Sequence record: NC_042116.1
Strand: one strand, 5' to 3'
DNA length: 64,000 nucleotides
Position 1 is the first letter of the stretch. The number at the start of each line of letters is the position of its first letter. The notes under the pieces are model-generated. The model did no database searches, was not told the origin of the DNA, and worked only from the letters and a program-made list of their open reading frames with translations. Position numbers and translations under genes: made by a program. Shown here piece by piece: positions 4,382 to 63,115 of the stretch.

Positions 4382-5518
4382 ATGATTGACGATCAGAATA
4401 ATGGTTTTGAAGAAGAACGCCAAAAAGCAACTAAGCGTAATCGTAAACCACGTACAACAAAAAAAGCAGAACCAGTAACTATCGATCAAGATGTGTTTGA
4501 ACAAGAGACAAAAAATCTTCCAGTACTACGTGATGCTAAAGGCACACAAATGGAACTGACTGTATCAAATATCCATTCATTGGGTTCAGATGCTGGACAA
4601 AATATTGGTAAATTGTCAGAAGAAATTTTGTCTAAAGTTAAAGTTGCAGATACTGGCGAATTAGGTGAAGGTATTTCTAATATTCTTACCTTAACTCGCA
4701 AAGTAGATATTACTCGGTTAGGTCAACAACGTACTGGTATGCTTTCACGTGTTTGGAATATCTTTGGTGATACTAAGCAGAAAGTACTGGATCAGTTCGA
4801 AACAAGTAAAGACCAAATTGAAAAAATTACCAACACATTAGGTTCAGGTATTGACCGTATGCGTGGTGAAGCAACTTGGCTTGAAAATGCGTATGATGCT
4901 AATATTGAATATTTGCATGAACTAGAAGATATTTTAGATAATGTCGATCTAGTAAAAGATATCGAAGATAAAAAGCTTGCAGTACTAATGGCAAATCCAG
5001 ATACTGCTATGAACGTACTGGATGAACAACGTATCATTACTGATGCATTAGATAAACAAGCTGATAAACTTCGTCGTTTAGTTCAACTAGCAAAATTGAC
5101 TGCACCTCAAATTGCATCAATGCGTAAAGTTAACGTAAACACTGTTGAAAAATTTGAATCATTGAATACTGTTGTAATTCCTGCATGGAAAAATAATATG
5201 AGCTTAAGTCTCATTAGTTTGCAACAGAAAAAAGATAATGAATTATCAAATATGATTGACAATGAAACCAACCGTTTGTTAAAGGATAATGCAAAAACCG
5301 TGGCACAAAACATGAAAGATGCAGCAGCCGCAAACCAACGTGGTGTAATTGATTTAGGCACCCTACAATCAATTCAAAACGATATGTTGGCTGGTATTAA
5401 AGAAACAATTCGTATCGAAGAAACTGGTCGACAAGAACGTAAGCAAGCCGCTATCCAAATGCAAAAAATGGATAATGATTTGAAAACTGCATTACGTGAT
5501 ATTGCACAGAAAAAGTAA
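4382..5518 (+). CDS. telA: toxic anion resistance protein TelA family
   Basis: 378-aa helical protein with TelA-type motifs 'AKLTAPQIASMRKVN...VIPAWKNNMSL' and 'NQRGVIDLGTL'. Confidence 0.8.
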   Translation: MIDDQNNGFEEERQKATKRNRKPRTTKKAEPVTIDQDVFEQETKNLPVLRDAKGTQMELTVSNIHSLGSDAGQNIGKLSEEILSKVKVADTGELGEGISNILTLTRKVDITRLGQQRTGMLSRVWNIFGDTKQKVLDQFETSKDQIEKITNTLGSGIDRMRGEATWLENAYDANIEYLHELEDILDNVDLVKDIEDKKLAVLMANPDTAMNVLDEQRIITDALDKQADKLRRLVQLAKLTAPQIASMRKVNVNTVEKFESLNTVVIPAWKNNMSLSLISLQQKKDNELSNMIDNETNRLLKDNAKTVAQNMKDAAAANQRGVIDLGTLQSIQNDMLAGIKETIRIEETGRQERKQAAIQMQKMDNDLKTALRDIAQKK

Positions 5519-10396: not shown

Positions 10397-12298
10397 GTGT
10401 TATATATGATTATTACTAAATCCGTTATTCAAGTACTAGTAGATATTGCTGGTATAAATTCTATTCAAATTCTAAAAGATACCCTTCAAGCCGCTGTTGG
10501 GAATGTTAGTATCGTAAGTTATTCGGTAAGCCCATCAAAGGCAATTCTTTATGTAGAAGCACAACCAACTGAAGGAATGGTTACTTTTGATTTAGCAGTT
10601 AAAGGCGATGGTTATAGCCTAATTCATGTAGTTGAAAGTATTGTTACTGATAATCCAAACTACACAGAAGGATCTGTTGCAGAGGTTTTTGCCGAGAATA
10701 AAACAGATGAACCACTTTCTGCTACTGTAATTATTTTTGATCGTGATCCTAAAATTGATAATATTCTAACAAAAGAATTCAAGTTATCAAATATTAGTAC
10801 TTATGATGGTTTAGTTTCTATCAGTGTTGATGATGGTCTTATACTAATTGAGAAACAATGTAATGTTGTTATTGATTACAGTACTTATAATAAAGAAACA
10901 GGAACGGTGCGTTTTCAACAAACTTCTCGTTCAGAAGATCCTGCATTACACATTACTAGATATACAGAAGAAGAATTGGAAGACTTAAATCGAAGAATTG
11001 AAGAATCCAAAAAACGTAAAAAAGTAATTGTAGATGATTATATTATCAATAAAAAACGTGTACAATTATCTAATATAGAAGTTGTAAATGGTAATGTAAT
11101 GATATTTGATAAAGATAATAAAATTATTTTATTACAAGATGAATATAACCTTGATTATGATCGTGATTCATTTAATACAGATGATGGTACTGTTGTCATT
11201 ATTAGAACGGACATAAAATTGAATCATCTATTAGATACAGGTTTAAATGCACAAATAGATCAAGCTGTTGCTTATGATAAAGAATTATATAGAATTAATG
11301 GAACAAAACTTATTGAAGGTATTATTAATGCGTTTGATGATATTGAACATGATAATTATACATATACATCTATTGAAGACGAGACTAATATTAGCAATAT
11401 TCAAAAAATGAAAGAACTTCTAATCAAGATAAGTGAAGATGAAGATATAACAACTATGAGCCAATCAGTCCAATATCATTATAATGATGAACTACATTGT
11501 TTGAGTGAAAACTCAGAAGTTGATACAGAAGAACTAACATTAACTCAAGAAGAACTTCGTGAATTAACTAAAGTACAACGCAGTAATGAAGTTATTGAAG
11601 TTGAAAATGCAGTAATTAGTTTTGATGCATTTGATAGTTACGCTTCTAAACATCATGTAATTGGATGGGATTTAGCAACACCAAGTACTTTATCAATTAA
11701 GTTTATTGAAGGTATTACTCCAGAAAGTACTATTAGGAAATTTCACGATATGATGGATAATCTTGATACTGGTTGGATAAACAGTTATCAAATGAATAAA
11801 TTAAAATCAGTTGAAGAAAGTACTAAATTCTTAGCCGATCTCAGAAATATGATTATTGATGAAAAAGATATTGCAGATGAATTTATATCTCGTGTAAACA
11901 AGCATAACATATTTGTACGTGATAGCATTTCTAAAATCCGTGCTTCTTTACTTGATATGGAAAATGATTTTGAACGTTCATTAAAAAATGAAGTTAATTT
12001 ATCCATTGATTGGGATAAACTAACTGCCTATGCAGCTAAAAAAGAACGTACTGAACATCGTGTTAAGGGTGTTCGTATTATTTCTGGCAATGATGGTGTA
12101 ACATCTAATGTTGTTCGTGTTAATTCTGAATTCGAAAATGGTGATTTCTTCATTCCAATACATTTACTAACTGATGAAATACGTTCAAAATATGTAATTG
12201 AGAGTTATCCACAATACATTGAAGATGTTCCAGATTACGCATTCCATGAAGTACATTTAAATGGTCACTTCATTCTTATTGAAAATACCGAACTATAA
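10397..12298 (+). CDS. large acidic hypothetical protein
   Basis: 633-aa ORF, GTG start with GGA RBS. Confidence 0.75.
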   Translation: MLYMIITKSVIQVLVDIAGINSIQILKDTLQAAVGNVSIVSYSVSPSKAILYVEAQPTEGMVTFDLAVKGDGYSLIHVVESIVTDNPNYTEGSVAEVFAENKTDEPLSATVIIFDRDPKIDNILTKEFKLSNISTYDGLVSISVDDGLILIEKQCNVVIDYSTYNKETGTVRFQQTSRSEDPALHITRYTEEELEDLNRRIEESKKRKKVIVDDYIINKKRVQLSNIEVVNGNVMIFDKDNKIILLQDEYNLDYDRDSFNTDDGTVVIIRTDIKLNHLLDTGLNAQIDQAVAYDKELYRINGTKLIEGIINAFDDIEHDNYTYTSIEDETNISNIQKMKELLIKISEDEDITTMSQSVQYHYNDELHCLSENSEVDTEELTLTQEELRELTKVQRSNEVIEVENAVISFDAFDSYASKHHVIGWDLATPSTLSIKFIEGITPESTIRKFHDMMDNLDTGWINSYQMNKLKSVEESTKFLADLRNMIIDEKDIADEFISRVNKHNIFVRDSISKIRASLLDMENDFERSLKNEVNLSIDWDKLTAYAAKKERTEHRVKGVRIISGNDGVTSNVVRVNSEFENGDFFIPIHLLTDEIRSKYVIESYPQYIEDVPDYAFHEVHLNGHFILIENTEL

Positions 12299-17918: not shown

Positions 17919-18983
17919 ATGAATAAAGGTTTATTTTTTGGTAAATTTGCCCCGTTAACTACGGGGCATGTATCCGCAATTGCTCAAGCTGCATCTAAAG
18001 TTGATCAGTTATATGTAATACTTTGTTGGGATGAAAAATTCCAAAAAACATTAACACCAGATTTACAAAAAATACTAACACTGCGAAATCGATTAATGTG
18101 GTTAAAAGATACCTTTAAACATCTTAATCATGTTAACATTTCTTATGTAGATGAAACTGGTATTCTATCATATCCAGATGGAGCATATAATTTCACTGAA
18201 CTCGTTCGAGATGAATTATTCAATAAGTTTAATTGTTGTGAAATTGAAACTGTATTCAGTTCAGAAACTGAATATAATGACTATTTTAAAAACCATTGGC
18301 CTGATAGTAAACATATACTTATTGATCCACCTCGCGAATTTGTAGATATTAGTGCAACTCGTGTAAGGGAAAATCCATATACTCATTGGGATTTTTTGGC
18401 TCCGGCAGCCCACCAGCATTTTGTTAAAAAAGTATGTGTGATTGGCGTTGAAAGTACTGGTAAAAGTACTTTAACAATCAATTTAGCAAATCATTTCAGT
18501 ACTCAATATGTAGAAGAAGTTGGTCGTACTATTTGTGAACATGAATATCATTGTTCAGAAAGTATGATGAATATCGAAGATTACGTGTATGTTGCTATGG
18601 AACATAAAGTTAAAGAGCACAAATACGTAAAAACTGCAAATAAATTACTTTTCAGTGATACTAACAATTTAATTACACTTTTCAGTGCAGAGTGTATGGG
18701 TAAAACCAGTGTAGTACTAAGCCAAATGGCGAATGCTGAAGAATATGATCTTGTAATTATGCTTGACATTGATGTTCCTTGGGTGTATGATCCATTACGT
18801 ACTAACAATACAAGTGTACTACGAGAATCGACATTTGAACATTTGAAGTTTTTATGTCATGCACATGGGGTCAAATATCATCTTATTAGTGGTGATTTTG
18901 ATAATCGTTATAAAACTGCTGTTAAATTAGTTCAGCAATTGCTGGAAGGTACATTAGATGAATGCACTAATTACGAGTCTTAA
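17919..18983 (+). CDS. nadR: NadR-like NMN adenylyltransferase / ribosylnicotinamide kinase
   Basis: N-terminal 'GKFAPLTTGH' (HxGH-type), 'ISATRVR', P-loop 'GVESTGKST', 'PWVYDPLR'. Confidence 0.9.
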   Translation: MNKGLFFGKFAPLTTGHVSAIAQAASKVDQLYVILCWDEKFQKTLTPDLQKILTLRNRLMWLKDTFKHLNHVNISYVDETGILSYPDGAYNFTELVRDELFNKFNCCEIETVFSSETEYNDYFKNHWPDSKHILIDPPREFVDISATRVRENPYTHWDFLAPAAHQHFVKKVCVIGVESTGKSTLTINLANHFSTQYVEEVGRTICEHEYHCSESMMNIEDYVYVAMEHKVKEHKYVKTANKLLFSDTNNLITLFSAECMGKTSVVLSQMANAEEYDLVIMLDIDVPWVYDPLRTNNTSVLRESTFEHLKFLCHAHGVKYHLISGDFDNRYKTAVKLVQQLLEGTLDECTNYES

Positions 18984-19761
18984 CCTGTCACCGTCATTAG
19001 TATGGGGATATATTTTATTCCTTACTACCGTTTGTGGTTTTTATGTATATCGTATTGCAGGAACAAATATTAAATTATCACAAGTGTTTAGTACTTGCAT
19101 TACTGATTTTAAAGGTTGGACTGTAAAAGAATATGCTTGGCTATTCATTGCCCCTGCTATTATATGTGCCACATCAATTATTATGGGCGGTGGCTGGATT
19201 GAATTTATTTGTTCAGTAACTAGTATTATTGGTGCTATCCTTGTAGCTAAGGGTAAAATAAGTTCTTACGTTTGGGGATTTGTAGGAACAGCTTTATATT
19301 TGTATATTTCTTATCAATATAAGCTATACGGTGAAACAATTACTTATGCATTATTGTTCTTGCCTATGCAGGTTTCAGGATATTATTATTGGATTCGTAA
19401 TAAAAAAGAAAACAATACTGATGTTATTAAAAAAGTGATGAGTACTAAACAACGTATTTGTTTGTTCTTTGGTACAGCAGTAGCTATCGCCGCTTACGCA
19501 GGTTTCTTGCGTTATCTCGAAGGCTCAATGCCAGGTTTAGATTCAGCCACTGCAATTCTATCAATTGTAGCTACAACCTTGATGGTAATGCGTTATGCTG
19601 AGCAATGGTTGGTTTGGATTATGGTTAACACTGTGGCTGTTATTATGTGGATTATGGCTGTTATGCACCATCAAGACCAAGGGTTTGCAGTACTTGCAAT
19701 GTGGAGTACATTCTGGTTAAACTCAGTATATGGCTGGTATCAATGGCGTAAAGGTAACTAA
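18958..19761 (+). CDS. pnuC: nicotinamide riboside transporter PnuC
   Basis: multi-TM protein with 'GYYYW', 'DS..AILSI.A..LM..RYAEQW..W', adjacent to nadR. Confidence 0.9.
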   Translation: MNALITSLNLSPSLVWGYILFLTTVCGFYVYRIAGTNIKLSQVFSTCITDFKGWTVKEYAWLFIAPAIICATSIIMGGGWIEFICSVTSIIGAILVAKGKISSYVWGFVGTALYLYISYQYKLYGETITYALLFLPMQVSGYYYWIRNKKENNTDVIKKVMSTKQRICLFFGTAVAIAAYAGFLRYLEGSMPGLDSATAILSIVATTLMVMRYAEQWLVWIMVNTVAVIMWIMAVMHHQDQGFAVLAMWSTFWLNSVYGWYQWRKGN

Positions 19762-31228: not shown

Positions 31229-31347
31229 CGGGAATTGGTGTAATGGCAGCACAACGTTATAACATAAATTCTTGTAGTAGAATTTCACAGCAACCAAAAC
31301 AATTGCATAGGGAGCCGTGAGATAAGGTTCGATTCCTTGATTCCCGA
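31229..31347 (+). ncRNA. tRNA interrupted in anticodon arm by ACAGCA module (Ala-type loop TTGCA)
   Basis: acceptor CGGGAAT/ATTCCCG, D arm GGTGTAATGGCAGCAC, T arm TAAGG-TTCGATT-CCTTG; insert AAATTCT-tgtagt-AGAATTT-c-ACAGCA. Confidence 0.7.
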
Positions 31348-50744: not shown

Positions 50745-50870
50745 GTGGGGTTAGCTCAGTTTGGTAGAGCAACGAAAGAAACCAAAATGGAATCTTGAAA
50801 AGGATTCTAACAGCATTATATCTTCTACTGTAAATTCGCGGGTCGGTGTGTTCAAATCCACCACCCCACA
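50745..50870 (+). ncRNA. tRNA interrupted by ACAGCA module (Tyr-type loop CTGTAAA)
   Basis: GTGGGGT/ACCCCAC, D arm GCTCAGTTTGGTAGAGC, ACGAA/TTCG, insert GAATCTT-gaaa-AGGATTC-ta-ACAGCA. Confidence 0.75.
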
Positions 50871-51025
50871 CAAAATTGGTAAAAAAGCTCTGCTGTGGGA
50901 CATTATATTCATCCACATGTTATTAGTTATTTTAAACAATCTGGTGAATATTTCAATGAATTGGATAAAACCGAACCAAGTAAATCAGATGTTGGTGGTG
51001 AATCAACAATAACTGGAAAATAAAA

Positions 51026-51754: not shown

Positions 51755-51875
51755 GGCGAGTTAGCTCAGAGGTAGAGCACGTAGAAACCAAGGATTCTAG
51801 TACTAGATTCCCGCAGCAACAATAACTCATACTATGATAAAGTCGTGGTCGGGGGTTCAAATCCCTCACTCGCCG
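51755..51875 (+). ncRNA. tRNA interrupted by GCAGCA module (Ile-type loop ATGATAA)
   Basis: GGCGAGT/ACTCGCC, D arm GCTCAGAGGTAGAGC, insert GGATTCTAG-ta-CTAGATTCC-c-GCAGCA, ACT-ATGATAA-AGT stem-loop. Confidence 0.75.
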
Positions 51876-54063: not shown

Positions 54064-54183
54064 AATATTTTAATTAAACTCATTTTTGTACTTGACATAA
54101 ATCAAGAAATGTCTTACAATGTGTATATGTTCAGTAATGAACTAAACCGTTGTTAAACTATAAATTACCTTTTGGGTGAAAAA

Positions 54184-55770
54184 ATGAAAAAAACTTTATT
54201 AGCGTTATCTATTGTAGTAGCATCAATGACTGCATTTAACGCAACCGCAGCAGTCTCTTTAAAATCATCAGGCGACCAATTTGGTCCGGCTATGTCTGAT
54301 TTACTGCAATCAAATGAAAACGGTAACTGGAATCAGCAACGATTCATGAACACGTTCAATAATCGCTTTAATGGTACTGAAGCAGAAGCATTAGCATTGT
54401 TTAATGCTGTAAAAGGTGGTAATGTTCCAACATCCCTTGATAGCTTTAATAGTACTTTACCATCTTCAGGTGGTACTGTCACAAAAGGTGATAAGGGCGA
54501 TAAAGGTGACAAAGGCGAAAATGGTGCAGATGGTACAAAAGTATCATTAACTCCAGATGGTACTATTACATTGGATGATGGTAAAGGTGGAACCGTTCAA
54601 CAAGATTTGGCTACACAAGCTGAATTAAATCAAGAACGTTATAAACTTGAACAAAAAGATAAAGAACACGATGTTACTCTTACTGATCATGAAACTCGTT
54701 TAGATACAGTCGAAAATATGACGAATGGTTTAAATGTCGTTGTAGGGACTAATAAACAAGATATCGAAGAATTAAAAGACGGTAAAGCAGACAAAAAAGA
54801 TCTGGATAAAGAAGTTGCAGATCGTGATGCTGGTGATAAAGTACTAGATTCTAAAATTGATAATGTAGTATCAAATCAATCAAGTACTGATGCTGCACAA
54901 AATGCCGCCATTGATAGTAAAGTAGATAAAACTACACAAGCAGCGAAAGATTCAGCTCAAGATACTGCTATTGGTAATAAAGTTGACAAAAGTCAATATA
55001 ATACTGATAAAGTAATTCAGGGTATTCATGATGCTGCACAAGACAATGCAATTATCGGACTGGCAGTAACAAAAGCAGACAAAAAAGATCTGGATAAAGA
55101 AGTAGCTGACCGTAAAACCGCAGATAATAAATTGCAATCAAATATTGACAATGAAGCAAATGTGCGTAATAATGCAGATGTTGCATTGAAAAACAATATT
55201 GATAAAAATAAAGCTGACCAACTTGGTGTTGATACTGCACAAAATGCCGTTATTGATACTAAAGCAAGTAAGCAAGATTTAAACACTGAAGTTGATGAAC
55301 GTAAAGTAGCTGATAAAAAGTTGCAGAAAAACATTGACAATGAAGCAAATGTACGTAATAATGCAGACCAAGTTCTTAGTTCTCGCATTGATACAAATAG
55401 TACTACTTTAGTACAACACGACCAACGTATTACAAGTAACACACAACGTGTTGGTGTAGTTGAAAATCGTGTAACTAATTTAGAACAAAGTACTAATCGT
55501 CGGTTTACAGAATTAAAAAGTACTGTAGATGATAACCGTAAAGTTGCAAGTGCTGGTATTGCTGGTGCAGGTGCAATGGCAAATATTCCACAAGTATCGC
55601 AAAATAGTACTTTCTCTGTCGGTGCTGGTATTGGTGGTTATGATAGTGAGCAAGCAGTTGCTGTAGGATTCTCTGCTCGTATTAACAACAACATTGTAAC
55701 TAAGGTTGCTGTAAGTACAAATACACAATCCGAGTTGTTATGGGGTGCTGGTGTAGGTGTAGAATGGTAA
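54184..55770 (+). CDS. YadA-like trimeric autotransporter/adhesin protein with collagen-like repeat
   Basis: signal peptide MKKTLLALSIV..A; GDKGDKGDKGENG; repeated stalk motifs; C-terminal anchor 'SAGIAGAGAMA..PQ..VGAG.G.Y..EQAVAVG...GVGVEW'. Confidence 0.85.
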   Translation: MKKTLLALSIVVASMTAFNATAAVSLKSSGDQFGPAMSDLLQSNENGNWNQQRFMNTFNNRFNGTEAEALALFNAVKGGNVPTSLDSFNSTLPSSGGTVTKGDKGDKGDKGENGADGTKVSLTPDGTITLDDGKGGTVQQDLATQAELNQERYKLEQKDKEHDVTLTDHETRLDTVENMTNGLNVVVGTNKQDIEELKDGKADKKDLDKEVADRDAGDKVLDSKIDNVVSNQSSTDAAQNAAIDSKVDKTTQAAKDSAQDTAIGNKVDKSQYNTDKVIQGIHDAAQDNAIIGLAVTKADKKDLDKEVADRKTADNKLQSNIDNEANVRNNADVALKNNIDKNKADQLGVDTAQNAVIDTKASKQDLNTEVDERKVADKKLQKNIDNEANVRNNADQVLSSRIDTNSTTLVQHDQRITSNTQRVGVVENRVTNLEQSTNRRFTELKSTVDDNRKVASAGIAGAGAMANIPQVSQNSTFSVGAGIGGYDSEQAVAVGFSARINNNIVTKVAVSTNTQSELLWGAGVGVEW

Positions 55771-57001: not shown

Positions 57002-57472
57002 ATGGGGTTAGTTATGGGTGTGATAGTTATTTACTGTATATTAGGTTCCCTTGGTTTATTCACATTGTATATGTTTGTAGTAACATCTGCAATGGGGACA
57101 GAACGACTTAAAACTTCTCAGTACTTTATGTCTTCATTGAGTTATTGTGAAGAAGCAACAACTAAAATTAATTTGTTGATTGATAAGTATGAAGCAGGGC
57201 TTATTAAAGCAAAATTAAAAAATAATGTAATTGAATTTACTGAAATGGAAAAAAATATTCCAGCAGGTGAAATCTGGATAGCAAATAAATATTTTTCATA
57301 TGGTCAGTTACATCGTTATGGTGCGAATGGAAATATCTCTTGGCAATGTAATAAACCAAGTTTAAAAACTTTTAAACGAATTATTAAACTTGAAAAACAG
57401 CTAAACGTTGCTCATCAAGAACCAGTACCGAAAAGTGCAAAATCAACAGATGAGCCTGTAATTTTGGACTAA
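57002..57472 (+). CDS. membrane-anchored hypothetical protein
   Basis: N-terminal TM; 'EIWIANKYFSYG', 'PSLKT'. Confidence 0.7.
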   Translation: MGLVMGVIVIYCILGSLGLFTLYMFVVTSAMGTERLKTSQYFMSSLSYCEEATTKINLLIDKYEAGLIKAKLKNNVIEFTEMEKNIPAGEIWIANKYFSYGQLHRYGANGNISWQCNKPSLKTFKRIIKLEKQLNVAHQEPVPKSAKSTDEPVILD

Positions 57473-57622
57473 GGGCGTAATTGCCCTATTTTAATTAAGA
57501 GATTTAAAATATACATTTGAGAACTTCATGGTATGGGAAAAGTAGTAAATTTCTTTCAAATGTTATCGTAAATATTTGAAACAACTAAAAAAATTGTGGT
57601 ATAATATAGTACATAAGGCAAC

Positions 57623-57738
57623 GGAATCTTACAGCAAAAATACTAATTTTGATGAAAACGAAACGACGAGGTTCGAATCCTCACCCACGAATTGCCTTAT
57701 TATTAGTGGGAGCATGGTGCTGGATAAACAAAGATTCC
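57623..57738 (+). ncRNA. ACAGCA-module element, permuted tRNA-like (Phe-type loop)
   Basis: GGAATCTT/AAGATTCC closing stem; TTTTG-ATGAAAA-CGAAA; T arm GAGG-TTCGAAT-CCTC; CCCAC/GTGGG. Confidence 0.65.
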
Positions 57739-57799
57739 AAAATTTAAGTTAGAAAAATATGAAACAAATCAAAAATTTGTGGTATAATATAAGAAGTAA

Positions 57800-57906
57800 A
57801 GCGGGATGGTGATTGATGAAAGCTGTTATTTGATTCTAGACAATCATAATAAGCGAGTAATAGAACAGGGTTCTTAATATCACATGGGTTCAAATCCCTG
57901 TCGCTG
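57800..57906 (+). ncRNA. degenerate tRNA-like element with expanded anticodon arm
   Basis: AGCGGGA/TGTCGCT, GGGTTCAAATCCC T arm, long variable region, GATT/AATC hairpin in place of the anticodon loop. Confidence 0.4.
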
Positions 57907-57921
57907 CACAAAAGCAACAAA

Positions 57922-58040
57922 TGAAATCTTACAGCAAACACAACATTTTTTCCTTGCATAGAAAAACGGTGGGGTTCGATTCCCCAACATCCAAGTTGCT
58001 TTTTAGGATGTGTCTGGACGACCGTATGACACAGATTTCA
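57922..58040 (+). ncRNA. ACAGCA-module element, permuted tRNA-like (Ala-type loop)
   Basis: TGAAATC/GATTTCA; TTTTC-CTTGCATA-GAAAA; GGGG-TTCGATT-CCCC; ACATCC/GGATGT. Confidence 0.65.
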
Positions 58041-58045
58041 GTACT

Positions 58046-58120
58046 GTTCCGTTAGACAAATTGGTATAGTCACCACACTTTCAATGTGGATTTCTGAGGG
58101 TTCAAGTCCCTCACGGAACG
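58046..58120 (+). tRNA. tRNA-Glu(UUC)
   Basis: GTTCCGT/ACGGAAC, CCACA-CTTTCAA-TGTGG. Confidence 0.85.
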
Positions 58121-58124
58121 CTAA

Positions 58125-58239
58125 AGGATTCGTACAGCAACAATAAACTCTTAAAATTCAATTGGTGAAAACAACCTTGCAGTTCGATTCTGCTTCCACA
58201 ATGCGTGGATCTGGTGGTGGATAGAAAAAACCGAATCCT
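58125..58239 (+). ncRNA. ACAGCA-module element, permuted tRNA-like (Phe-type loop)
   Basis: AGGATTCG/CGAATCCT; TTG-GTGAAAA-CAA; GCAG-TTCGATT-CTGC; TCCAC/GTGGA. Confidence 0.65.
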
Positions 58240-58277
58240 GATTTTAATTAAGAAGTACTAAAGAATTTGATACACAC

Positions 58278-58430
58278 GGATTTATACAGCAAACATAATC
58301 CTAAAATAAAACATACGATAATGTTATTAACTCGGAATTCGTTCCTTTCGTTAGTACTTGGCAACTTGGGTACTTAAATAAGTTGTATCACCTCATGTGT
58401 ATCGGATTAGTGGTGATTATAAATAAATCC
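58278..58430 (+). ncRNA. ACAGCA-module element (possible Arg-type loop TACGA)
   Basis: GGATTTA/TAAATCC closing stem + tACAGCA; AACAT-ACGATA-ATGTT hairpin; degenerate remainder. Confidence 0.5.
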
Positions 58431-58466
58431 AGTAAATCAAAAGTACCTTTATCGGTACTTTTTTAT

Positions 58467-58559
58467 GGAAGATTGGCAGAGTTTGGTTTATTGCACAGGT
58501 CTTGAGTACCTGCGGGGGTTAATAGCCCTCCGTGAGTTCGAATCTCACATCTTCCTCCA
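58467..58559 (+). tRNA. tRNA-Ser(UGA)
   Basis: CAGGT-CTTGAGT-ACCTG, long variable arm, CCA. Confidence 0.9.
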
Positions 58560-58577
58560 AATTTTATGTAGTACAAT

Positions 58578-58652
58578 GGGGTACGTAGCTCAGTCTGGTA
58601 GAGCAGCCATGCGAAAACGGTGTGTCGGTGGTTCGAATCCACTCGCTCCCCA
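58578..58652 (+). tRNA. degenerate tRNA-Phe(GAA)-like
   Basis: canonical D and T arms; anticodon stem only ~3 bp around GCGAAAA; acceptor mismatched. Confidence 0.5.
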
Positions 58653-58656
58653 CTAA

Positions 58657-58713
58657 GGAATCTAGCAGCAACCATAACCCAATCAAACTTTTAATTTGAC
58701 AATTATGGATTCC
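58657..58713 (+). ncRNA. minimal module + Lys(UUU) anticodon stem-loop
   Basis: GGAATC-ta-GCAGCA...TCAAA-CTTTTAA-TTTGA...GGATTCC. Confidence 0.7.
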
Positions 58714-58736
58714 AGTTATTTTAAGTTGAGAATAGC

Positions 58737-59141
58737 ATGACGGATAACGAAAAACTTGAAAATATATTAATTGAAGCATTGACAATAATTAATACTTCAA
58801 CATATAATTTTGAAACGTCCAAAGACGATTCAAAATCTAGATTTGTCTTATGCGGTAAAAGAGCACAACTTAAGTTGTACTTTTCTGCCAAATATGGTGA
58901 ATTAAGTATAGAATTTATTCATCACTTGATTGGAGATACCCTATCATTTCAGATTAATTATTATGATGATTCGGACGAAGATGATGATTACCATAATTTA
59001 TATGGTGAAATACGTATTCCAAGAACTGAAGAACAATACTTTCAGTACTACACAATTCAAGATCATGTTTTCTCTTTAGAGTTTTATAAATTATTAGAAA
59101 ACATAATGAACGAATTATTGGTAAAGTGGCAGAGCGGCTGA
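58737..59141 (+). CDS. hypothetical protein ('EExxFQ' family)
   Basis: 'TEEQYFQYYT'; 3' end overlaps tRNA-Ser. Confidence 0.65.
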   Translation: MTDNEKLENILIEALTIINTSTYNFETSKDDSKSRFVLCGKRAQLKLYFSAKYGELSIEFIHHLIGDTLSFQINYYDDSDEDDDYHNLYGEIRIPRTEEQYFQYYTIQDHVFSLEFYKLLENIMNELLVKWQSG

Positions 59142-59210
59142 ATGCAACCGCTTGGAAAGCGGTCAGGTTAGGTGATACTAGCCTCGTAGGTTCAAATCCT
59201 ATCTTTACCG
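59120..59210 (+). tRNA. tRNA-Ser(GGA)
   Basis: GGTAAAG/CTTTACC, ACCGC-TTGGAAA-GCGGT, long variable arm. Confidence 0.9.
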
Positions 59211-59260
59211 CAAAAGTAATAACCTCCTTATTAAAGAATACATACCCATAGGAGAATATT

Positions 59261-59617
59261 ATGTACGAGAAAGATGATGGTCCATTAACAGATGAACAAT
59301 TGTGTATTATTCGTGAAATGAATAGTCATTTAGAACAATCTAATTTAAGTATAGACTTGGATTGGTTAAATAGTGAAAAACAAGGAAATGCAATGTATTA
59401 CGACTACTATTACAAAATTGATGGTGAACTTCGTCGTCATACCAGTAATCAAGAGTTAACTGATGCGGAAATCAATAATATTTTTGGTGCAAGCAAACAT
59501 GTGGTAATGCTTACTCCAATTGTTTTTGAACGTGAGATTAGTACGGAAGATAAGTCTGGTAATAAAATTAAAAGTACTGAAAAAGTACACGTAGGATTTT
59601 TAGGTTACGTGGAATAA
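59261..59617 (+). CDS. hypothetical protein
   Basis: 118 aa, GGAG RBS. Confidence 0.65.
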   Translation: MYEKDDGPLTDEQLCIIREMNSHLEQSNLSIDLDWLNSEKQGNAMYYDYYYKIDGELRRHTSNQELTDAEINNIFGASKHVVMLTPIVFEREISTEDKSGNKIKSTEKVHVGFLGYVE

Positions 59618-59662
59618 TATAATTTATTGGATTCGAAAGAATCCTTTTTAAGTGAGATGATT

Positions 59663-59887
59663 ATGGATAATCAACATAAAAAGATTAAAGGGTATCGTGA
59701 CCTTTCTCAAAAAGAAATCGATGCAATGAATGAAATTAAACAACTAGCAGCTACTGTTGAAGAGTTAATTGAAAAACTTGAAGGAACTGACTCTATTGAT
59801 AAACGCTGGCTTGCTATTGCAAAAACAGATTTACAAAAAGGGTTCATGTCAGCAGTGCGAAGCGTGGCTAAACCAGATTCCTTTTGA
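59663..59887 (+). CDS. acb2: anti-CBASS cyclic-nucleotide sponge Acb2 (T4 Vs.4-like)
   Basis: [22 protein letters not shown]...[13 protein letters not shown]...R.VA.PDSF closely matches Acb2 as recalled. Confidence 0.9.
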
Positions 59888-60276
59888 GGAAAATAATGCA
59901 TCCAATTGATAACCATGCTGATATAATTGATGATGTTATAACTGAAATACTTGAAATTTATACGTGTAAAGTTGAAGTTTATAATTATGGTAATTTGTTT
60001 TCACAGCACGGCTATAGTACTAAACATAATATAAATTATCATATAAATGCAAAGTACTATAATAATAATTCAAAAAATGGTAGACGAGCTAATAGTCTTG
60101 TGATAGAATTTAAATTCACTAACAGAGTTCCTAAAGGACTAAAAGATTATTATAGATTATCAATACCTGAAATACAAAGTATTACAGAAGAACGACATTT
60201 TCAATTAATGTTAGTTACTGATGATATGTACTTGGATTATGAAGTTATAAATAAATTACGTACACATATTATGTAA
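59884..60276 (+). CDS. hypothetical protein ('EExxFQ' family)
   Basis: '[10 protein letters not shown]'. Confidence 0.6.
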
Positions 60277-60285
60277 AAAAGTTTT

Positions 60286-60339
60286 TAGAATCTAACAGCA
60301 ATCAAAACTCATTGGATATATGAAAAAAAATAGATTCTA
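60286..60339 (+). ncRNA. minimal module + Ile-like loop (near-duplicate of 61155)
   Basis: TAGAATCTA-ACAGCA...TCAT-TGGATAT-ATGA...TAGATTCTA. Confidence 0.65.
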
Positions 60340-60344
60340 GTATT

Positions 60345-60416
60345 TGGGAATTATCTCAGCGGTAGAGAGCACAACTGATAATTGTGAGGTCACTGGTTCA
60401 AATCCAGTATTCCCAA
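60345..60416 (+). tRNA. tRNA-Ile(GAU)
   Basis: TGGGAAT/ATTCCCA, CACAA-CTGATAA-TTGTG. Confidence 0.9.
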
Positions 60417-60515
60417 CTAAGTAGTTCAGTACTGAAATATGTACAGTGAAATTATTCAACACTATAGGTAGAACTTTGAATGAATCAGTAAGCCTATAAG
60501 TAACTATATTAAATT

Positions 60516-60646
60516 TGGAATTCAACAGCAATCTTCACTTACTAAAAACAGCTACCTCACGGTTTGTAGGTTCGAGTCCTACCTTGTACTTTCGAGTACA
60601 TGTGGTGAAATCGGTAAACACGGCTGTCAAAAAGAAATGAATTCCA
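60516..60646 (+). ncRNA. circularly permuted Leu-type tRNA within ACAGCA module
   Basis: TGGAATTCA/TGAATTCCA; 3' half (ACAGC, long variable arm, GTAGG-TTCGAGT-CCTAC, CTTGTAC), T-TTCG-A cap, then 5' half (GTACATG, TGGTGAAATCGGTAAACAC, GCTGT). Confidence 0.8.
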
Positions 60647-60699
60647 GTATTAATTAAGACATAAATATTCTTATACATTATTTTTGTAGGAATATAGAT

Positions 60700-60912
60700 A
60701 TGGAAATGAAAAAGTTGATGGAAGAGATATCTTCCATAATGGAAGGACAATTACCATGATATTATTATCACGGTAGCTCTAGACCAATATCAAATTTCAG
60801 TGATGAGTTTGTGGGAGAACGTTTTATAATAGTATATAATCCAGCAAGCATAAAAGTTATAAACACTTTCAATCCAGAAGAAGCTAAGCAGAAACTACTT
60901 GGAAGTGATTAA
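60700..60912 (+). pseudogene. remnant ORF with in-frame TGA (60757-60759), YHGS motif
   Basis: MEMKKLMEEISSIMEGQLP*YYYHGSSRPISNFSDEFVG...; AGGA RBS. Confidence 0.4.
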
Positions 60913-60918
60913 AAAATT

Positions 60919-61038
60919 TGGAATTCAACAGCAAATCATTCAAAACACGTAGCATGTCGTAGGTTCAAGTCCTACCAGTACTTAATTGTACTGTAGCTCA
61001 GTCGGGAGAGCAGCCACCTTAAAAAGAAATGAATTCCA
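60919..61038 (+). ncRNA. circularly permuted tRNA within ACAGCA module
   Basis: TGGAATTCA/TGAATTCCA; GTAGC-ATGTC-GTAGG-TTCAAGT-CCTAC-CAGTAC-ttaatt-GTACTG-TAGCTCAGTCGGGAGAGC-A-GCCAC. Confidence 0.8.
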
Positions 61039-61154
61039 GCCTAATTAAATTCACCAGGCGTACTATGGTGTGACAAGATAGCATGTTATCACGTCAGAAT
61101 AGAATACGTATTAGTCCCTTGAAAGGACTTCTGTAAACTCAATTTATAATATTT

Positions 61155-61208
61155 TAGAATCTAACAGCAATCAAAAATCATTGGATATATGAAAAAAGAT
61201 AGATTCTA
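61155..61208 (+). ncRNA. minimal module + Ile-like loop
   Basis: near-identical to 60286-60339. Confidence 0.65.
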
Positions 61209-61232
61209 GCTTTAATTGAATAAAACTAAATT

Positions 61233-61294
61233 TGGAATCCAGCAGCAACCATAAATGAAATCAACTGTTAATTGAAAAATCAAAATGGATTCCA
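61233..61294 (+). ncRNA. minimal module + Asn(GUU) anticodon stem-loop
   Basis: TGGAATCCA-GCAGCA...TCAA-CTGTTAA-TTGA...TGGATTCCA. Confidence 0.7.
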
Positions 61295-61314
61295 GTATTT
61301 TTAATATACATTGA

Positions 61315-61821
61315 ATGGACTCAATGAAAAAAGATATAGATAATAGTAAAGTTATTTCTATGATAGAACAAGGTCGTTCTGTTAGAGATATAGCTAAAGA
61401 GTGTAATGTCGCTTATTCAACAATGAACAAGTATTTCAAAAATAATAATTTGAAATCACAATATATGATCCAATTAGAATCACCTATATGTTTTAAACAT
61501 AATGTTGAGTTTACTAAACGTAATAATTCTAATAAGAGAATATGTTGGAAATGCAATGCTGAAAATGTGTCGAAACATAGAAAAAAATTGAAAATAAAAT
61601 CAGTAGAATATCTTGGTGGTAAATGTGAACGTTGTGGATATAATAAATCAATGTCAGCATTAGAGTTTCATCATAAAGATCCTAGTGAGAAAGATTTTGA
61701 AATTTCAGCGAAAGGTATTACACGTTCTTGGCAAAAGATACAAATTGAGCTTGATAAATGTATGTTGTTATGTTCAAATTGTCATCGTGAAATTCATGAT
61801 GAACTTAATTTAGAAAATTAA
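61315..61821 (+). CDS. HNH homing endonuclease with N-terminal HTH
   Basis: 'YLGGKCERCG..ALEFHH.DP..K...LDKCMLLCSNCHREIH'; paralog of 22862. Confidence 0.85.
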   Translation: MDSMKKDIDNSKVISMIEQGRSVRDIAKECNVAYSTMNKYFKNNNLKSQYMIQLESPICFKHNVEFTKRNNSNKRICWKCNAENVSKHRKKLKIKSVEYLGGKCERCGYNKSMSALEFHHKDPSEKDFEISAKGITRSWQKIQIELDKCMLLCSNCHREIHDELNLEN

Positions 61822-62004: not shown

Positions 62005-62047
62005 AAGAATCTTTCAGCATTAACACGGTGAAAATATATAGATTCTT
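62005..62047 (+). ncRNA. shortest module variant
   Basis: AAGAATCT-ttCAGCA...GGTGAAAA...AGATTCTT. Confidence 0.5.
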
Positions 62048-63051: not shown

Positions 63052-63115
63052 AAGAATCCAACAGCACCCATAAATGAAATCAACTGTTAATTGAAAAATT
63101 CAAAAATGGATTCTT
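63052..63115 (+). ncRNA. minimal module + Asn(GUU) anticodon stem-loop (near-duplicate of 61233)
   Basis: AAGAATCCA-ACAGCA...TCAA-CTGTTAA-TTGA...TGGATTCTT. Confidence 0.7.

What the first reader, a model, noticed from the sequence alone, without database searches (positions are those of the whole stretch)
60516..61038. Circularly permuted tRNA genes with hairpin-capped acceptor stems
Seen: 60516-60646 reads module 5' arm, anticodon-stem 3' strand ACAGC, long variable arm, T arm GTAGG-TTCGAGT-CCTAC, acceptor 3' strand CTTGTAC, a T-TTCG-A (UUCG) cap, acceptor 5' strand GTACATG, Leu-type D arm, anticodon-stem 5' strand GCTGT, module 3' arm. 60919-61038 has the same order with a CAGTAC-ttaatt-GTACTG acceptor. 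More degenerate versions lie at 57623, 57922 and 58125. Established: permuted tRNA genes are known from some algae and archaea and need BHB-type splicing; I am not aware of them in phages. With the acceptor capped there is no free CCA end, so these cannot be charged unless recut and religated.
Basis: seen in the sequence. Interest (0 to 1): 0.9.

Follow-up and report, generated by a model that had tools for sequence, protein, structure and literature searches.

The report
Phage Y RNAs that mimic tRNA
The "permuted tRNA genes" are real structured RNAs, but they are most likely Y-RNA-like small RNAs with a tRNA-shaped domain, partners of a Ro60-like ring protein that this jumbo phage and hundreds of other phages encode.

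Summary
Elements 60515-60647 and 60918-61039 read: terminal stem, T arm, hairpin-capped acceptor stem, D arm, terminal stem. Orthologs in five related jumbo phages keep these helices through compensatory changes.

They are not tRNA genes. There is no conserved anticodon loop, and the cap loop varies from 2 to more than 30 nt. The same "module" (a 7-10 bp stem P1, then ACAGCAA, an A-rich 3' linker, then AGU) also occurs without any tRNA body. It also occurs at the anticodon position of four normal-order tRNA-like genes. The window holds at least 16 copies.

This topology matches bacterial Y RNA YrlA. Rfam YrlA hits the tRNA-like part, but only at 36 bits against a threshold of 69.

The phage (Yersinia phage fHe-Yen9-04) encodes a DUF2828/vWA protein next to an RNA ligase and a 2H phosphoesterase. 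Its predicted structure matches only Ro60 in the PDB (E 6e-9). In Felixounavirus and in Mycobacterium, Listeria, Staphylococcus, Bacillus and Campylobacter phages, the ACAGCAA module lies directly beside this gene.

A covariance model trained only on those other lineages recovers the window's modules as its top hits.

Verdict: an uncatalogued Y-RNA family for a divergent phage Ro60, a new variant of a known kind. Binding and function are inferred, not shown.

The parts
60515..60647 (+). E1: Y-RNA-like RNA with a permuted class-II tRNA-like domain. Order: P1, ACAGCAA, V arm, T arm, capped acceptor stem, D arm, A-rich linker, P1', AG.
   Evidence: Sequence. Six orthologs with compensatory changes. 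Re-permuted form is called tRNA-like by ARAGORN. Cross-lineage CM returns the exact ends, but weakly: 13.7 bits, E 3.7.
60918..61039 (+). E2: Y-RNA-like RNA with a permuted class-I tRNA-like domain and a CAGTAC-ttaatt-GTACTG capped stem.
   Evidence: Rfam YrlA hit at 60952-61014: 36.2 bits (GA 69), E 3e-6 in a 601-nt search. Covariation counts. CM returns the exact ends at 11.7 bits, E 9.9.
57623..57738 (+). M1: degenerate permuted tRNA-like Y RNA. P1 is GGAATCTT/AAGATTCC, T arm GAGG-TTCGAAT-CCTC, capped stem CCCAC/GTGGG.
   Evidence: Orthologs at 83-98% identity in five phages. An extended -10 promoter lies just upstream.
57922..58040 (+). M2: permuted tRNA-like Y RNA. It ends 5 nt before tRNA-Glu.
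   Evidence: CM hit 57920-58043: 28.9 bits, E 0.0023.
58125..58239 (+). M3: permuted tRNA-like Y RNA. It starts 4 nt after tRNA-Glu.
   Evidence: CM hit 58123-58242: 31.7 bits, E 0.0006.
58278..58430 (+). M4: module with a long, degenerate interior. P1 is GGATTTAT/ATAAATCC.
   Evidence: Ortholog in BF at 97% identity.
58657..58715 (+). 'Empty' module (YrlB-like) with no tRNA body: GGAATC-uAGCAGCAA-CCATAA...TTATGG-ATTCC-AG.
   Evidence: CM hit at 23.2 bits, E 0.036.
60285..60340 (+). 'Empty' module: TTAGAATCTA-ACAGCAA...TAGATTCTAG. It ends 4 nt before tRNA-Ile.
   Evidence: Best CM hit in the window: 35.3 bits, E 1e-4.
61154..61209 (+). 'Empty' module, near-duplicate of 60285-60340.
   Evidence: CM hit at 34.4 bits, E 1.6e-4.
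61232..61295 (+). 'Empty' module: TTGGAATCCA-GCAGCAA...TGGATTCCAG.
   Evidence: CM hit at 31.4 bits, E 7e-4.
62005..62047 (+). Short 'empty' module with a variant core (UUCAGCAU), between tRNA-Asn and tRNA-Gln.
   Evidence: CM hit at 24.3 bits, E 0.022.
63052..63115 (+). 'Empty' module with a variant core (ACAGCAC).
   Evidence: CM hit at 27.7 bits, E 0.004.
31229..31347 (+). Normal-order chimera. tRNA-like acceptor, D and T arms with the module closed at its tip (AAATTCT-tgtagt-AGAATTT-CACAGCAA) in place of the anticodon loop.
   Evidence: Sequence read.
49922..50035 (+). Normal-order chimera with a tRNA-Glu-like body. The module is GATTCTT-gatt-AAGAATC-TTACGGCAT.
   Evidence: Rfam tRNA hit at 38.6 bits with a 54-nt insert at the anticodon position.
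50745..50872 (+). Normal-order chimera. The module is TGGAATCTT-gaaa-AGGATTCTA-ACAGCAT.
   Evidence: Sequence read.
51755..51875 (+). Normal-order chimera. The module is GGATTCTAG-ta-CTAGATTCC-CGCAGCAA.
   Evidence: Rfam tRNA hit at 46.4 bits with a 62-nt insert. The XbC2 ortholog has P1 AATTACAG/CTGTAATT, a covarying stem.
57576..57605 (+). Sigma-70-type extended -10 promoter (TTGAAA-18-TATAAT with TG) upstream of M1.
   Evidence: This is a consensus match only.

Best explanation
These loci encode Y-RNA-like small RNAs, the RNA partners of a Ro60-type ring protein. They are not tRNAs.

What is shown:
- Each RNA's 5' and 3' ends pair in a 7-10 bp stem (P1).
- P1 is followed by an asymmetric internal loop, with ACAGCAA on the 5' side and an A-rich run on the 3' side.
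- The distal part is either a tRNA-shaped domain (T arm, D arm, capped acceptor stem) or a small hairpin. These correspond to YrlA and YrlB of bacteria.
- The phage genome encodes a divergent Ro60 (Pfam DUF2828 + DUF7788/vWA) inside an RNA-repair gene cluster.
- The same RNA module sits directly next to that gene in many unrelated phages.

What is inferred:
- The RNAs are cut out of tRNA-containing precursors by the tRNA-processing RNases and RNase E.
- P1 plus the ACAGCAA loop docks on the Ro60-like ring.
- The tRNA-like domain recruits or mimics tRNA-binding partners such as PNPase, RNase P, the CCA-adding enzyme or the RNA ligase.
- The resulting RNP serves RNA surveillance/repair and counter-defence during infection.

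The four normal-order chimeras present the same docking module on a tRNA body whose ends can be matured like those of a tRNA.
For: 1. Topology. The Rfam YrlA model aligns to E2 as stem, T arm, capped stem, D arm, stem. The full YrlA consensus has a terminal stem, an asymmetric loop with an A-rich 3' side, and a tRNA-like domain.

2. Structure under selection. Compensatory changes occur in P1, the anticodon-type stem, the T stem and the V arm among six phages.

3. Partner protein.
- Yen9-04 encodes a 508-aa DUF2828+DUF7788 protein.
- The AlphaFold model has pLDDT 84 and pTM 0.84.
- Its six best PDB matches are all Ro60: 1YVR at E 5.8e-9 and TM 0.59, then 2I91, 1YVP, and the phage phiLo Ro60 9L5Y. 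Everything below them is vWA-only.
- Its neighbours are an RNA ligase (PF09414) and a 2H-SAK phosphoesterase.

4. Linkage.
- In 42 loci holding this gene there are 28 modules on the gene strand against 1 on the other strand, within about 350 nt of the gene.
- Modules lie directly beside the gene in Mycobacterium MsGreen (3, one with a permuted tRNA-like domain), Listeria LP-125 (3), Staphylococcus 6ec (3), Bacillus Tsamsa (2), Campylobacter F365 (2) and uncultured lineages.
- In Felixounavirus (4) and T4-like S13 (2 chimeras) they lie in the tRNA array that the gene heads, about 350-1000 nt downstream.

5. Family test.
- A CM built only from those other lineages gives the window's modules as its eight best hits, E 1e-4 to 0.04, all on the + strand.
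- It finds nothing below E 0.4 in 209 kb of the rest of the genome.

6. Literature.
- Phage Ro60/Y RNA pairs are known (PMC4201824, PMC12135203).
- In P100-like Listeria phage CKA15, three very abundant unannotated RNAs map within 2 kb upstream of the Rsr-like gene (PMC12282133).
- Felixounavirus Bas63 gp130 is Ro60-like, lies upstream of the tRNAs and counters the Ppl defence (PMC11482910).
Against: - No binding or expression data exist for this phage.
- In Yen9-04 the RNAs lie about 145-210 kb from the Ro60-like gene, not beside it.
- The Rfam YrlA score is below threshold: 36 and 39 bits against 69.
- The Rsr-binding motif GNCGAA is absent.
- The cross-lineage CM scores E1 and E2 themselves only weakly (E 3.7 and 9.9). 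Their assignment rests on arms that are nearly identical to the significant 'empty' modules.
- The Ro60 fold match has TM of only about 0.55-0.59.
- I cannot prove that the CKA15 abundant RNAs are the three modules I found. A ROOL-like RNA is also in that region.
Confidence: 0.78

Rival explanations
1. They are true circularly permuted tRNA genes. The precursor is cut at the module arms, ligated to form an anticodon loop, opened at the cap by RNase P and a 3' nuclease, given CCA and charged.
For: - The tRNA body is genuine and under selection.
- The phage encodes Rnl1, Pnkp, a second RNA ligase, a CCA-adding enzyme, Thg1 and TyrRS.
- ARAGORN calls the re-permuted E2 as tRNA-Leu(UAA) with an 'intron' at 37/38.
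- M. smegmatis YrlA can be cut by RNase P and receive CCA (PMC4201824).
Against: - No conserved anticodon among orthologs.
- No bulge-helix-bulge.
- The cap loop is 2-6 nt in most orthologs and more than 30 nt in CBB.
- The acceptor-type stem is only 4-6 bp in several orthologs.
- The same arms enclose non-tRNA hairpins, and lie beside Ro60-like genes in phages of three bacterial phyla.
Confidence: 0.04
2. The modules are RNA-processing 'punctuation' hairpins, or selfish repeats that shuffle cassettes in the tRNA region. The tRNA-like inserts are decaying pseudogenes.
For: - The modules are intergenic and abut tRNAs at 3-5 nt.
- The 3' flank AGU|AUU resembles an RNase E site (my reading).
- Copy number and position vary between related phages.
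- Degenerate tRNA remnants occur nearby (58579-58651).
Against: - The tRNA-like domains keep their helices through compensatory changes across genera.
- The ACAGCAA core is invariant in 22 modules from 9 lineages with unrelated P1 sequences.
- The tight linkage to one protein family across phyla is not expected for generic processing sites or selfish repeats.
Confidence: 0.08
3. They are tRNA-mimic decoys or sponges that act on their own, without Ro60, against host tRNA-targeting defence nucleases or tRNA-modifying toxins.
For: - The elements are tRNA-shaped, multi-copy and expressed from early-type promoters in a tRNA array.
- Phages are known to counter tRNA-directed defences. This is general knowledge, see PMC7824862.
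Against: - Both usual targets, the anticodon loop and the free acceptor end, are missing.
- 'Empty' modules have no tRNA shape.
- This idea does not explain the conserved ACAGCAA/P1 unit or its linkage to the Ro60-like gene.
Confidence: 0.08

Closest known systems
YrlA / bacterial Y RNAs (Rfam RF02553; Chen et al. 2014, PMC4201824), including those of Ro60-encoding mycobacteriophages
   Same: - The 5' and 3' ends pair in a terminal stem.
- An asymmetric internal loop has an A-rich 3' side.
- The distal domain has T arm, capped acceptor-like stem and D arm in that 'permuted' order.
- A shorter sibling RNA lacks the tRNA domain (YrlB).
- The partner is a Ro60-fold protein in an RNA-repair gene context.
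   Different: - The protein-binding motif is ACAGCAA after P1, not GNCGAA.
- Rfam scores are 36-39 bits against a threshold of 69.
- The partner is the DUF2828/DUF7788 family, not Pfam TROVE.
- There are at least 16 copies spread through a tRNA array about 145-210 kb from the protein gene.
- tRNA bodies of different classes are used.
- Normal-order versions exist with an open acceptor end.
Thermus phage phiLo Ro60 with Yrl1/Yrl2 (PMC12135203; PDB 9L5Y)
   Same: - A phage-encoded Ro60 with phage-encoded stem, bulge, stem RNAs next to the gene.
- It is a Foldseek match of the Yen9-04 protein (E 1.2e-6).
   Different: - The phiLo RNAs carry a CGAA motif, and the text I searched mentions no tRNA-like domain (the term does not occur in the paper).
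- Sequence identity of the proteins is about 16%.
Circularly permuted tRNA genes of Cyanidioschyzon merolae and some archaea
   Same: The 3' half of a tRNA body lies upstream of the 5' half, joined by a short linker at the acceptor ends.
   Different: - Those mature into decoding tRNAs through a BHB motif, a splicing endonuclease, a circular intermediate, and RNase P/Z cuts.
- Here there is no BHB and no anticodon loop.
- The linker is a simple hairpin loop.
Ro60-like gp130 of Felixounavirus Bas63 and CKA15_055 of P100-like Listeria phage (PMC11482910, PMC12282133)
   Same: - Same protein family: tblastn at 38% (Felixounavirus) and 32% (Listeria phages) to the BF ortholog.
- Same position at a tRNA array.
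- The authors suspected unidentified Y RNAs.
   Different: Those papers did not define the RNAs. The ACAGCAA module found here beside the orthologous genes is a candidate for them.

Membership tests
YrlA (Rfam RF02553) | Scores at or above the family's gathering threshold (69 bits) | tested here: not met
   E2 scores 36.2 bits and covers only model positions 24-84. E1 gives no hit. The MsGreen relative scores 39.3 bits.
YrlA (Rfam RF02553) | tRNA-like domain in the order T arm, capped acceptor-like stem, D arm, enclosed by a stem | tested here: met
   cmscan alignment, RNAfold and covariation counts.
YrlA (Rfam RF02553) | GNCGAAN0-1G motif near the 5' end (proposed Rsr contact; PMC4201824) | tested here: not met
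   The 5' arm reads UUGGAAUUCA-ACAGCAA. No GNCGAA is present. The YrlA terminal-stem part does not align to the real P1.
Y RNA (Ro60 partner RNA, broad sense) | Encoded next to a Ro60 gene | tested here: inconclusive
   Not adjacent in Yen9-04: the gene is at record 101854-103380 and the RNAs at about 279-311 kb. The same module is directly adjacent in Mycobacterium, Listeria, Staphylococcus, Bacillus and Campylobacter phages and uncultured lineages, and within about 1 kb downstream, in the tRNA array, in Felixounavirus and T4-like S13.
Y RNA (Ro60 partner RNA, broad sense) | Terminal 5'/3' stem flanking an internal loop with a conserved motif | tested here: met
   P1 of 7-10 bp with covarying inner pairs, plus an invariant CAGCAA. 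The CM built on this recovers the window copies.
Y RNA (Ro60 partner RNA, broad sense) | Physically bound and stabilised by Ro60 | not testable with these tools
   Needs RIP/CLIP or EMSA.
Ro60 / TROVE protein (for the partner gene) | HEAT-repeat ring plus C-terminal vWA domain | tested here: met
   AlphaFold pLDDT 84. Foldseek's top six matches are all Ro60 over the full length, E 6e-9 to 1e-6, TM 0.49-0.59.
Ro60 / TROVE protein (for the partner gene) | Matches Pfam TROVE (PF05731) or solved Ro60 by sequence | tested here: not met
   Pfam gives DUF2828 + DUF7788 only. phmmer and hmmsearch against the PDB find no Ro60.
Circularly permuted tRNA gene | 3' half upstream of 5' half, and re-permutation gives a cloverleaf | tested here: met
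   ARAGORN calls both re-permuted sequences, but only with the intron option.
Circularly permuted tRNA gene | A 7-nt anticodon loop with a conserved anticodon after processing | tested here: not met
   A 40-60 nt module occupies the position. The candidate loops differ among orthologs. ARAGORN's anticodon calls are inconsistent.
Circularly permuted tRNA gene | Bulge-helix-bulge at the processing junction, and a removable linker between the acceptor ends | tested here: not met
   P1 is a continuous helix. The cap is 2-6 nt in most orthologs. Whether a splicing endonuclease gene is present was not tested.

The most novel reading that the evidence does not exclude
A previously undefined family of phage Y RNAs spans phages of three bacterial phyla. 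Its signature is 5'-(U)GGA..P1..(N0-3)ACAGCAA ... A-rich ..P1'..UCC-AGU. It is the cognate RNA of the DUF2828-type Ro60 found in more than 700 sequenced phages, including Felix-O1-like, P100-like, Staphylococcus and Campylobacter phages. The family exists in three circular permutations: ends at P1, ends at a tRNA acceptor stem, or no tRNA body. In Rak2-like jumbo phages it has expanded to well over a dozen copies inside the tRNA array. Together with the Ro60-like protein it would form the RNP behind the reported counter-defence activity of Bas63 gp130.
Probability: 0.5. Interest if true: 0.72.

Novelty: new variant of a known kind. Interest (0 to 1): 0.6.

Why it matters
Ro60-like genes sit at the head of tRNA arrays in hundreds of phages, including phages used for biocontrol and as laboratory models. 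One of them has a counter-defence phenotype. Their RNA partners have only been guessed at. A concrete, searchable RNA signature makes the system directly testable by binding assays, knock-outs and structures.

It also corrects annotation. Several over-long "tRNA-Lys" and "tRNA-Ser" genes in related phages are chimeras that cannot decode.

Finally, one protein-docking module occurs on a tRNA scaffold in both gene orders. That is an unusual natural example of circular permutation of a non-coding RNA.

Tried and rejected
- Self-cleaving ribozyme or riboswitch: no Rfam family other than tRNA and YrlA at E<=10 over 57400-61400.
- tRNA intron: the inserts give no conserved anticodon loop.
- ToxI-like antitoxin repeat: only k-mer resemblance, and on the wrong strand (my reading; not pursued).
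- TROVE among the window's ten largest ORFs: none.
- Sequence-level PDB search for the partner protein: nothing. Only the fold search worked.
- Pattern scan of IMG/VR: most single hits were chance. Only jumbo-phage contigs held real modules after a P1 filter.
- The 'unbiased' ACAGCAA+P1 count has a high background for 6-7 bp stems in AT-rich DNA, so it is only weakly informative.
- T4 stable RNAs C and D: no convincing module.
- Literature on DUF2828: nothing relevant. Supplement of PMC7824862 and the review PMC10870794 were not held.
- CM hit 57195-57265 lacks CAGCAA and lies in a CDS: chance.

Full report
**Origin.** The window is Yersinia phage fHe-Yen9-04 (NC_042116, 354 kb, Eneladusvirus, a Rak2-like jumbo phage). 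Window position equals record position minus 248000. None of the elements discussed here is annotated in the record.

**Observation.** Reading 57400-61400 confirms the finding letter by letter.
- E1 (60515-60647) and E2 (60918-61039) each begin with TTGGAATTCA-ACAGCAA and end with an A-rich run followed by TGAATTCCAG.
- Between these arms lie, in order: the 3' strand of an anticodon-type stem, a variable region, a canonical T arm, a hairpin-capped acceptor-type stem, a D arm, and the 5' strand of the anticodon-type stem.
- ARAGORN finds 16 ordinary tRNAs in the window but nothing at these sites.
- After cutting in the cap and joining the outer ends, ARAGORN calls both as tRNAs, but only with its intron option and with arbitrary anticodons.
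- Degenerate copies lie at 57623, 57922, 58125 and 58278.

**Structure under selection.** Orthologs in Serratia BF, Xanthomonas XbC2, Cronobacter GAP32, Pectobacterium CBB and Erwinia Kaldavass were aligned. Compensatory changes include:
- E2 anticodon-type stem: A-U to G-C, C-G to U-A, and C.A to A-U.
- E2 T stem: GUAGG/CCUAC to GCAGG/CCUGC.
- E1 anticodon-type stem: ACAGC/GCUGU to AUAGC/GCUAU.
- E1 V arm: ACC/GGU to GCC/GGC.
- P1: UCA/UGA to UUA/UAA.

With the structure I read from the sequence, 94.6% of cells pair, against 18-41% for slid partners. Five pairs have double-sided changes, reached by 1 of 500 shuffles. The cap loop ranges from 2 nt to more than 30 nt. The E1 cap hairpin has a wholly different sequence in the two genera.

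**Why these are not tRNA genes.**
- The place of the anticodon loop is taken by the arms.
- The candidate loop sequences differ among orthologs.
- P1 has no bulge-helix-bulge.
- The same arms enclose short hairpins with no tRNA body at 58657, 60285, 61154, 61232, 62005 and 63052.
- Four normal-order tRNA-like genes carry the same module, closed at its tip, in place of the anticodon loop. These are 31229-31347, 49922-50035, 50745-50872 and 51755-51875. Two of them are Rfam tRNA hits with 54-62 nt inserts.
- So one RNA shape occurs in two circular permutations, plus a body-less form.
- Related phages annotate such chimeras as 119-122-nt 'tRNA-Lys' or 'tRNA-Ser'.

**The lead.** A permissive Rfam scan hit YrlA (Y RNA-like) on E2 at 36.2 bits against a threshold of 69. 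The hit covers the T arm, capped stem and D arm.
- YrlA is the tRNA-mimicking partner RNA of bacterial Ro60 (Rsr). It is encoded next to rsr, and a GNCGAA motif lies near its 5' end (PMC4201824).
- The full YrlA consensus has the same layout as our RNAs: terminal stem, asymmetric loop with an A-rich 3' side, and tRNA-like domain.
- The motif and the terminal stem do not match ours.

**The partner protein.**
- No TROVE protein is in the window.
- In Serratia BF, a 508-aa 'hypothetical' lies beside an RNA ligase and is Pfam DUF2828 + DUF7788.
- Yen9-04 has a 92% identical copy at record 101854-103380. It is flanked by an RNA ligase (PF09414) and a 2H-SAK phosphoesterase.
- The genomes of this lineage also encode Rnl1 and Pnkp (annotated in both Yen9-04 and BF) and, in BF, an RlaP nucleotidyltransferase, Thg1, a CCA-adding enzyme and TyrRS.
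- Sequence and profile searches of the PDB found nothing.
- The AlphaFold model (pLDDT 84, pTM 0.84) matches Ro60, and only Ro60, over its full length. The matches are Xenopus Ro 1YVR/2I91/1YVP and Thermus phage phiLo Ro60 9L5Y, at E 5.8e-9 to 1.2e-6, probability 1.00, and TM (query-normalised) 0.49-0.59. The next matches are isolated vWA domains at E above 0.02.
- tblastn finds this protein in 711 phage records. Some are curated as 'Ro-like RNA binding protein'.

**Linkage of RNA and protein.**
- In 42 IMG/VR loci holding the gene, a structural scan (P1 of at least 7 bp, up to 3 nt, CAGCAA, A-rich 3' linker) finds 28 modules on the gene strand and 1 on the opposite strand. They lie 200-350 nt downstream or 80-200 nt upstream of the gene.
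- In one such lineage (about 43% protein identity) the gene is followed by a permuted tRNA-like element and two 'empty' modules.
- Cultured phages show the same pattern. Modules directly flank the gene in MsGreen, LP-125, 6ec, Tsamsa and F365; in Felixounavirus TP1 and T4-like S13 they lie in the tRNA array that the gene heads, about 350-1000 nt downstream:

| Phage | Modules near the gene |
|---|---|
| Mycobacterium phage MsGreen | 3, one with T arm / capped stem / D arm; P1 = GGACCCC/GGGGUCC |
| Listeria LP-125 | 3 |
| Staphylococcus 6ec | 3 |
| Bacillus Tsamsa | 2, one behind a consensus promoter |
| Campylobacter F365 | 2 |
| Felixounavirus TP1 | 4 in the tRNA array that the gene heads |
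| T4-like Cronobacter S13 | 2 normal-order chimeras ending in CCA |

- P1 sequences are unrelated between lineages, while CAGCAA is invariant in 22 of 22 aligned modules.

**Objective family test.**
- A covariance model was built only from those 22 modules, none from the jumbo-phage lineage.
- It was searched over the window without filters. Its eight best hits (35.3-23.2 bits, E 1e-4 to 0.036) are all on the + strand and all coincide with the elements listed above.
- E1 and E2 come back with exactly the P1 ends. Their scores are non-significant (13.7 and 11.7 bits) because the model must skip about 100 nt.
- 209 kb of other Eneladusvirus DNA gives no hit below E 0.4.
- ACAGCAA occurs there only at chance frequency.

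**Expression and processing (inferred).**
- Extended -10 promoters lie at 57576-57605 and 57759-57788.
- Modules abut tRNAs by 3-5 nt.
- The 3' flank AGU/AUU resembles an RNase E site (my reading).

**Literature.**
- Phage Ro60/Y RNA pairs are established for mycobacteriophages and for Thermus phage phiLo. In phiLo the RNP also binds host PNPase (PMC4201824; PMC12135203).
- Jumbo phages were noted to carry ROT/TROVE proteins with a tRNA-like partner (PMC7824862).
- For the protein family studied here, two papers suspected unidentified Y RNAs. In P100-like Listeria phage CKA15 there are three very abundant RNAs upstream of an Rsr-like gene, and the protein is found in virions (PMC12282133). In Felixounavirus Bas63, the Ro60-like gp130 lies upstream of the tRNAs and counters the Ppl defence (PMC11482910).
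- I found no paper that defines these RNAs.

**Conclusion.** The elements are best explained as Y-RNA-like RNAs with YrlA architecture. They have a different docking motif and a divergent Ro60 partner, and they are multiplied within the tRNA array. Membership in Rfam YrlA fails on score and motif. 'Works like a Y RNA' is strongly supported by topology, by the partner's fold and by cross-phylum gene linkage. Binding and biological role remain inferences.

Noticed in passing
window 44524-44599 (+): tRNA with anticodon CTA. ARAGORN labels it 'Pyl'. It is an amber-suppressor-type tRNA in the phage tRNA array.
   Followed up: no
window 58579-58651 (+): Degenerate tRNA. Rfam scores it 36.4 bits, ARAGORN does not call it, and the record annotates it as tRNA-Ser. 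The acceptor stem has two mismatches and the loop GCGAAAA has no U33. In XbC2 the equivalent position holds a tRNA/module chimera.
   Followed up: partly
window 57790-57915 (+): A stretch behind an extended -10 promoter (57759-57788) with a T-arm-like GGGTTCAAATCCC and a ...CGCTGCA end. It may be another tRNA-like remnant. Not resolved.
   Followed up: no
window 54172-55770 (+): 532-aa ORF with a YadA-type membrane-anchor domain (E 3e-18). The record annotates it as 'adhesin'. This is unusual cargo for a phage.
   Followed up: no
window 17919-19761 and 4382-5518 (+): NadR-like NMN adenylyltransferase/AAA protein, a PnuC NMN transporter and a TelA protein. These are NAD-salvage and tellurite-resistance-type genes.
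   Followed up: no
L003:4249-4370, L005:4321-4439, L175:4396-4638: Over-long 'tRNA-Lys', 'tRNA-Ser' and 'tRNA-OTHER' annotations in XbC2, CBB and Cronobacter phage S13 are normal-order tRNA/module chimeras. They are probably not decoding tRNAs. The S13 ones end in an encoded CCA.
   Followed up: partly
L176:971-1522 (Listeria phage LP-125): Near-threshold ROOL RNA hit (87.4 bits, GA 99.1) between tRNAs and the Ro60-like gene. It could be one of the 'highly abundant RNAs' reported for the related phage CKA15.
   Followed up: no
L177:1464-1485 (Vibrio phage 6E35-1b): An ACAGCAA motif with an upstream arm lies in the 5' leader of the Ro60-like gene itself. This may be autoregulation. The pairing partner is ambiguous.
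   Followed up: no
L181:909-1172, minus strand (phage T4 rnaC, rnaD): T4's stable RNAs of unknown function show no clear ACAGCAA module. rnaC ends in a tRNA-like T arm plus acceptor strand. rnaD contains ACAGCAG and ends in CCA.
   Followed up: partly
window 10397-12298 (+): 633-aa ORF with a weak RNase E/G thioredoxin-like domain hit (E 0.004, below the cut-off).
   Followed up: no
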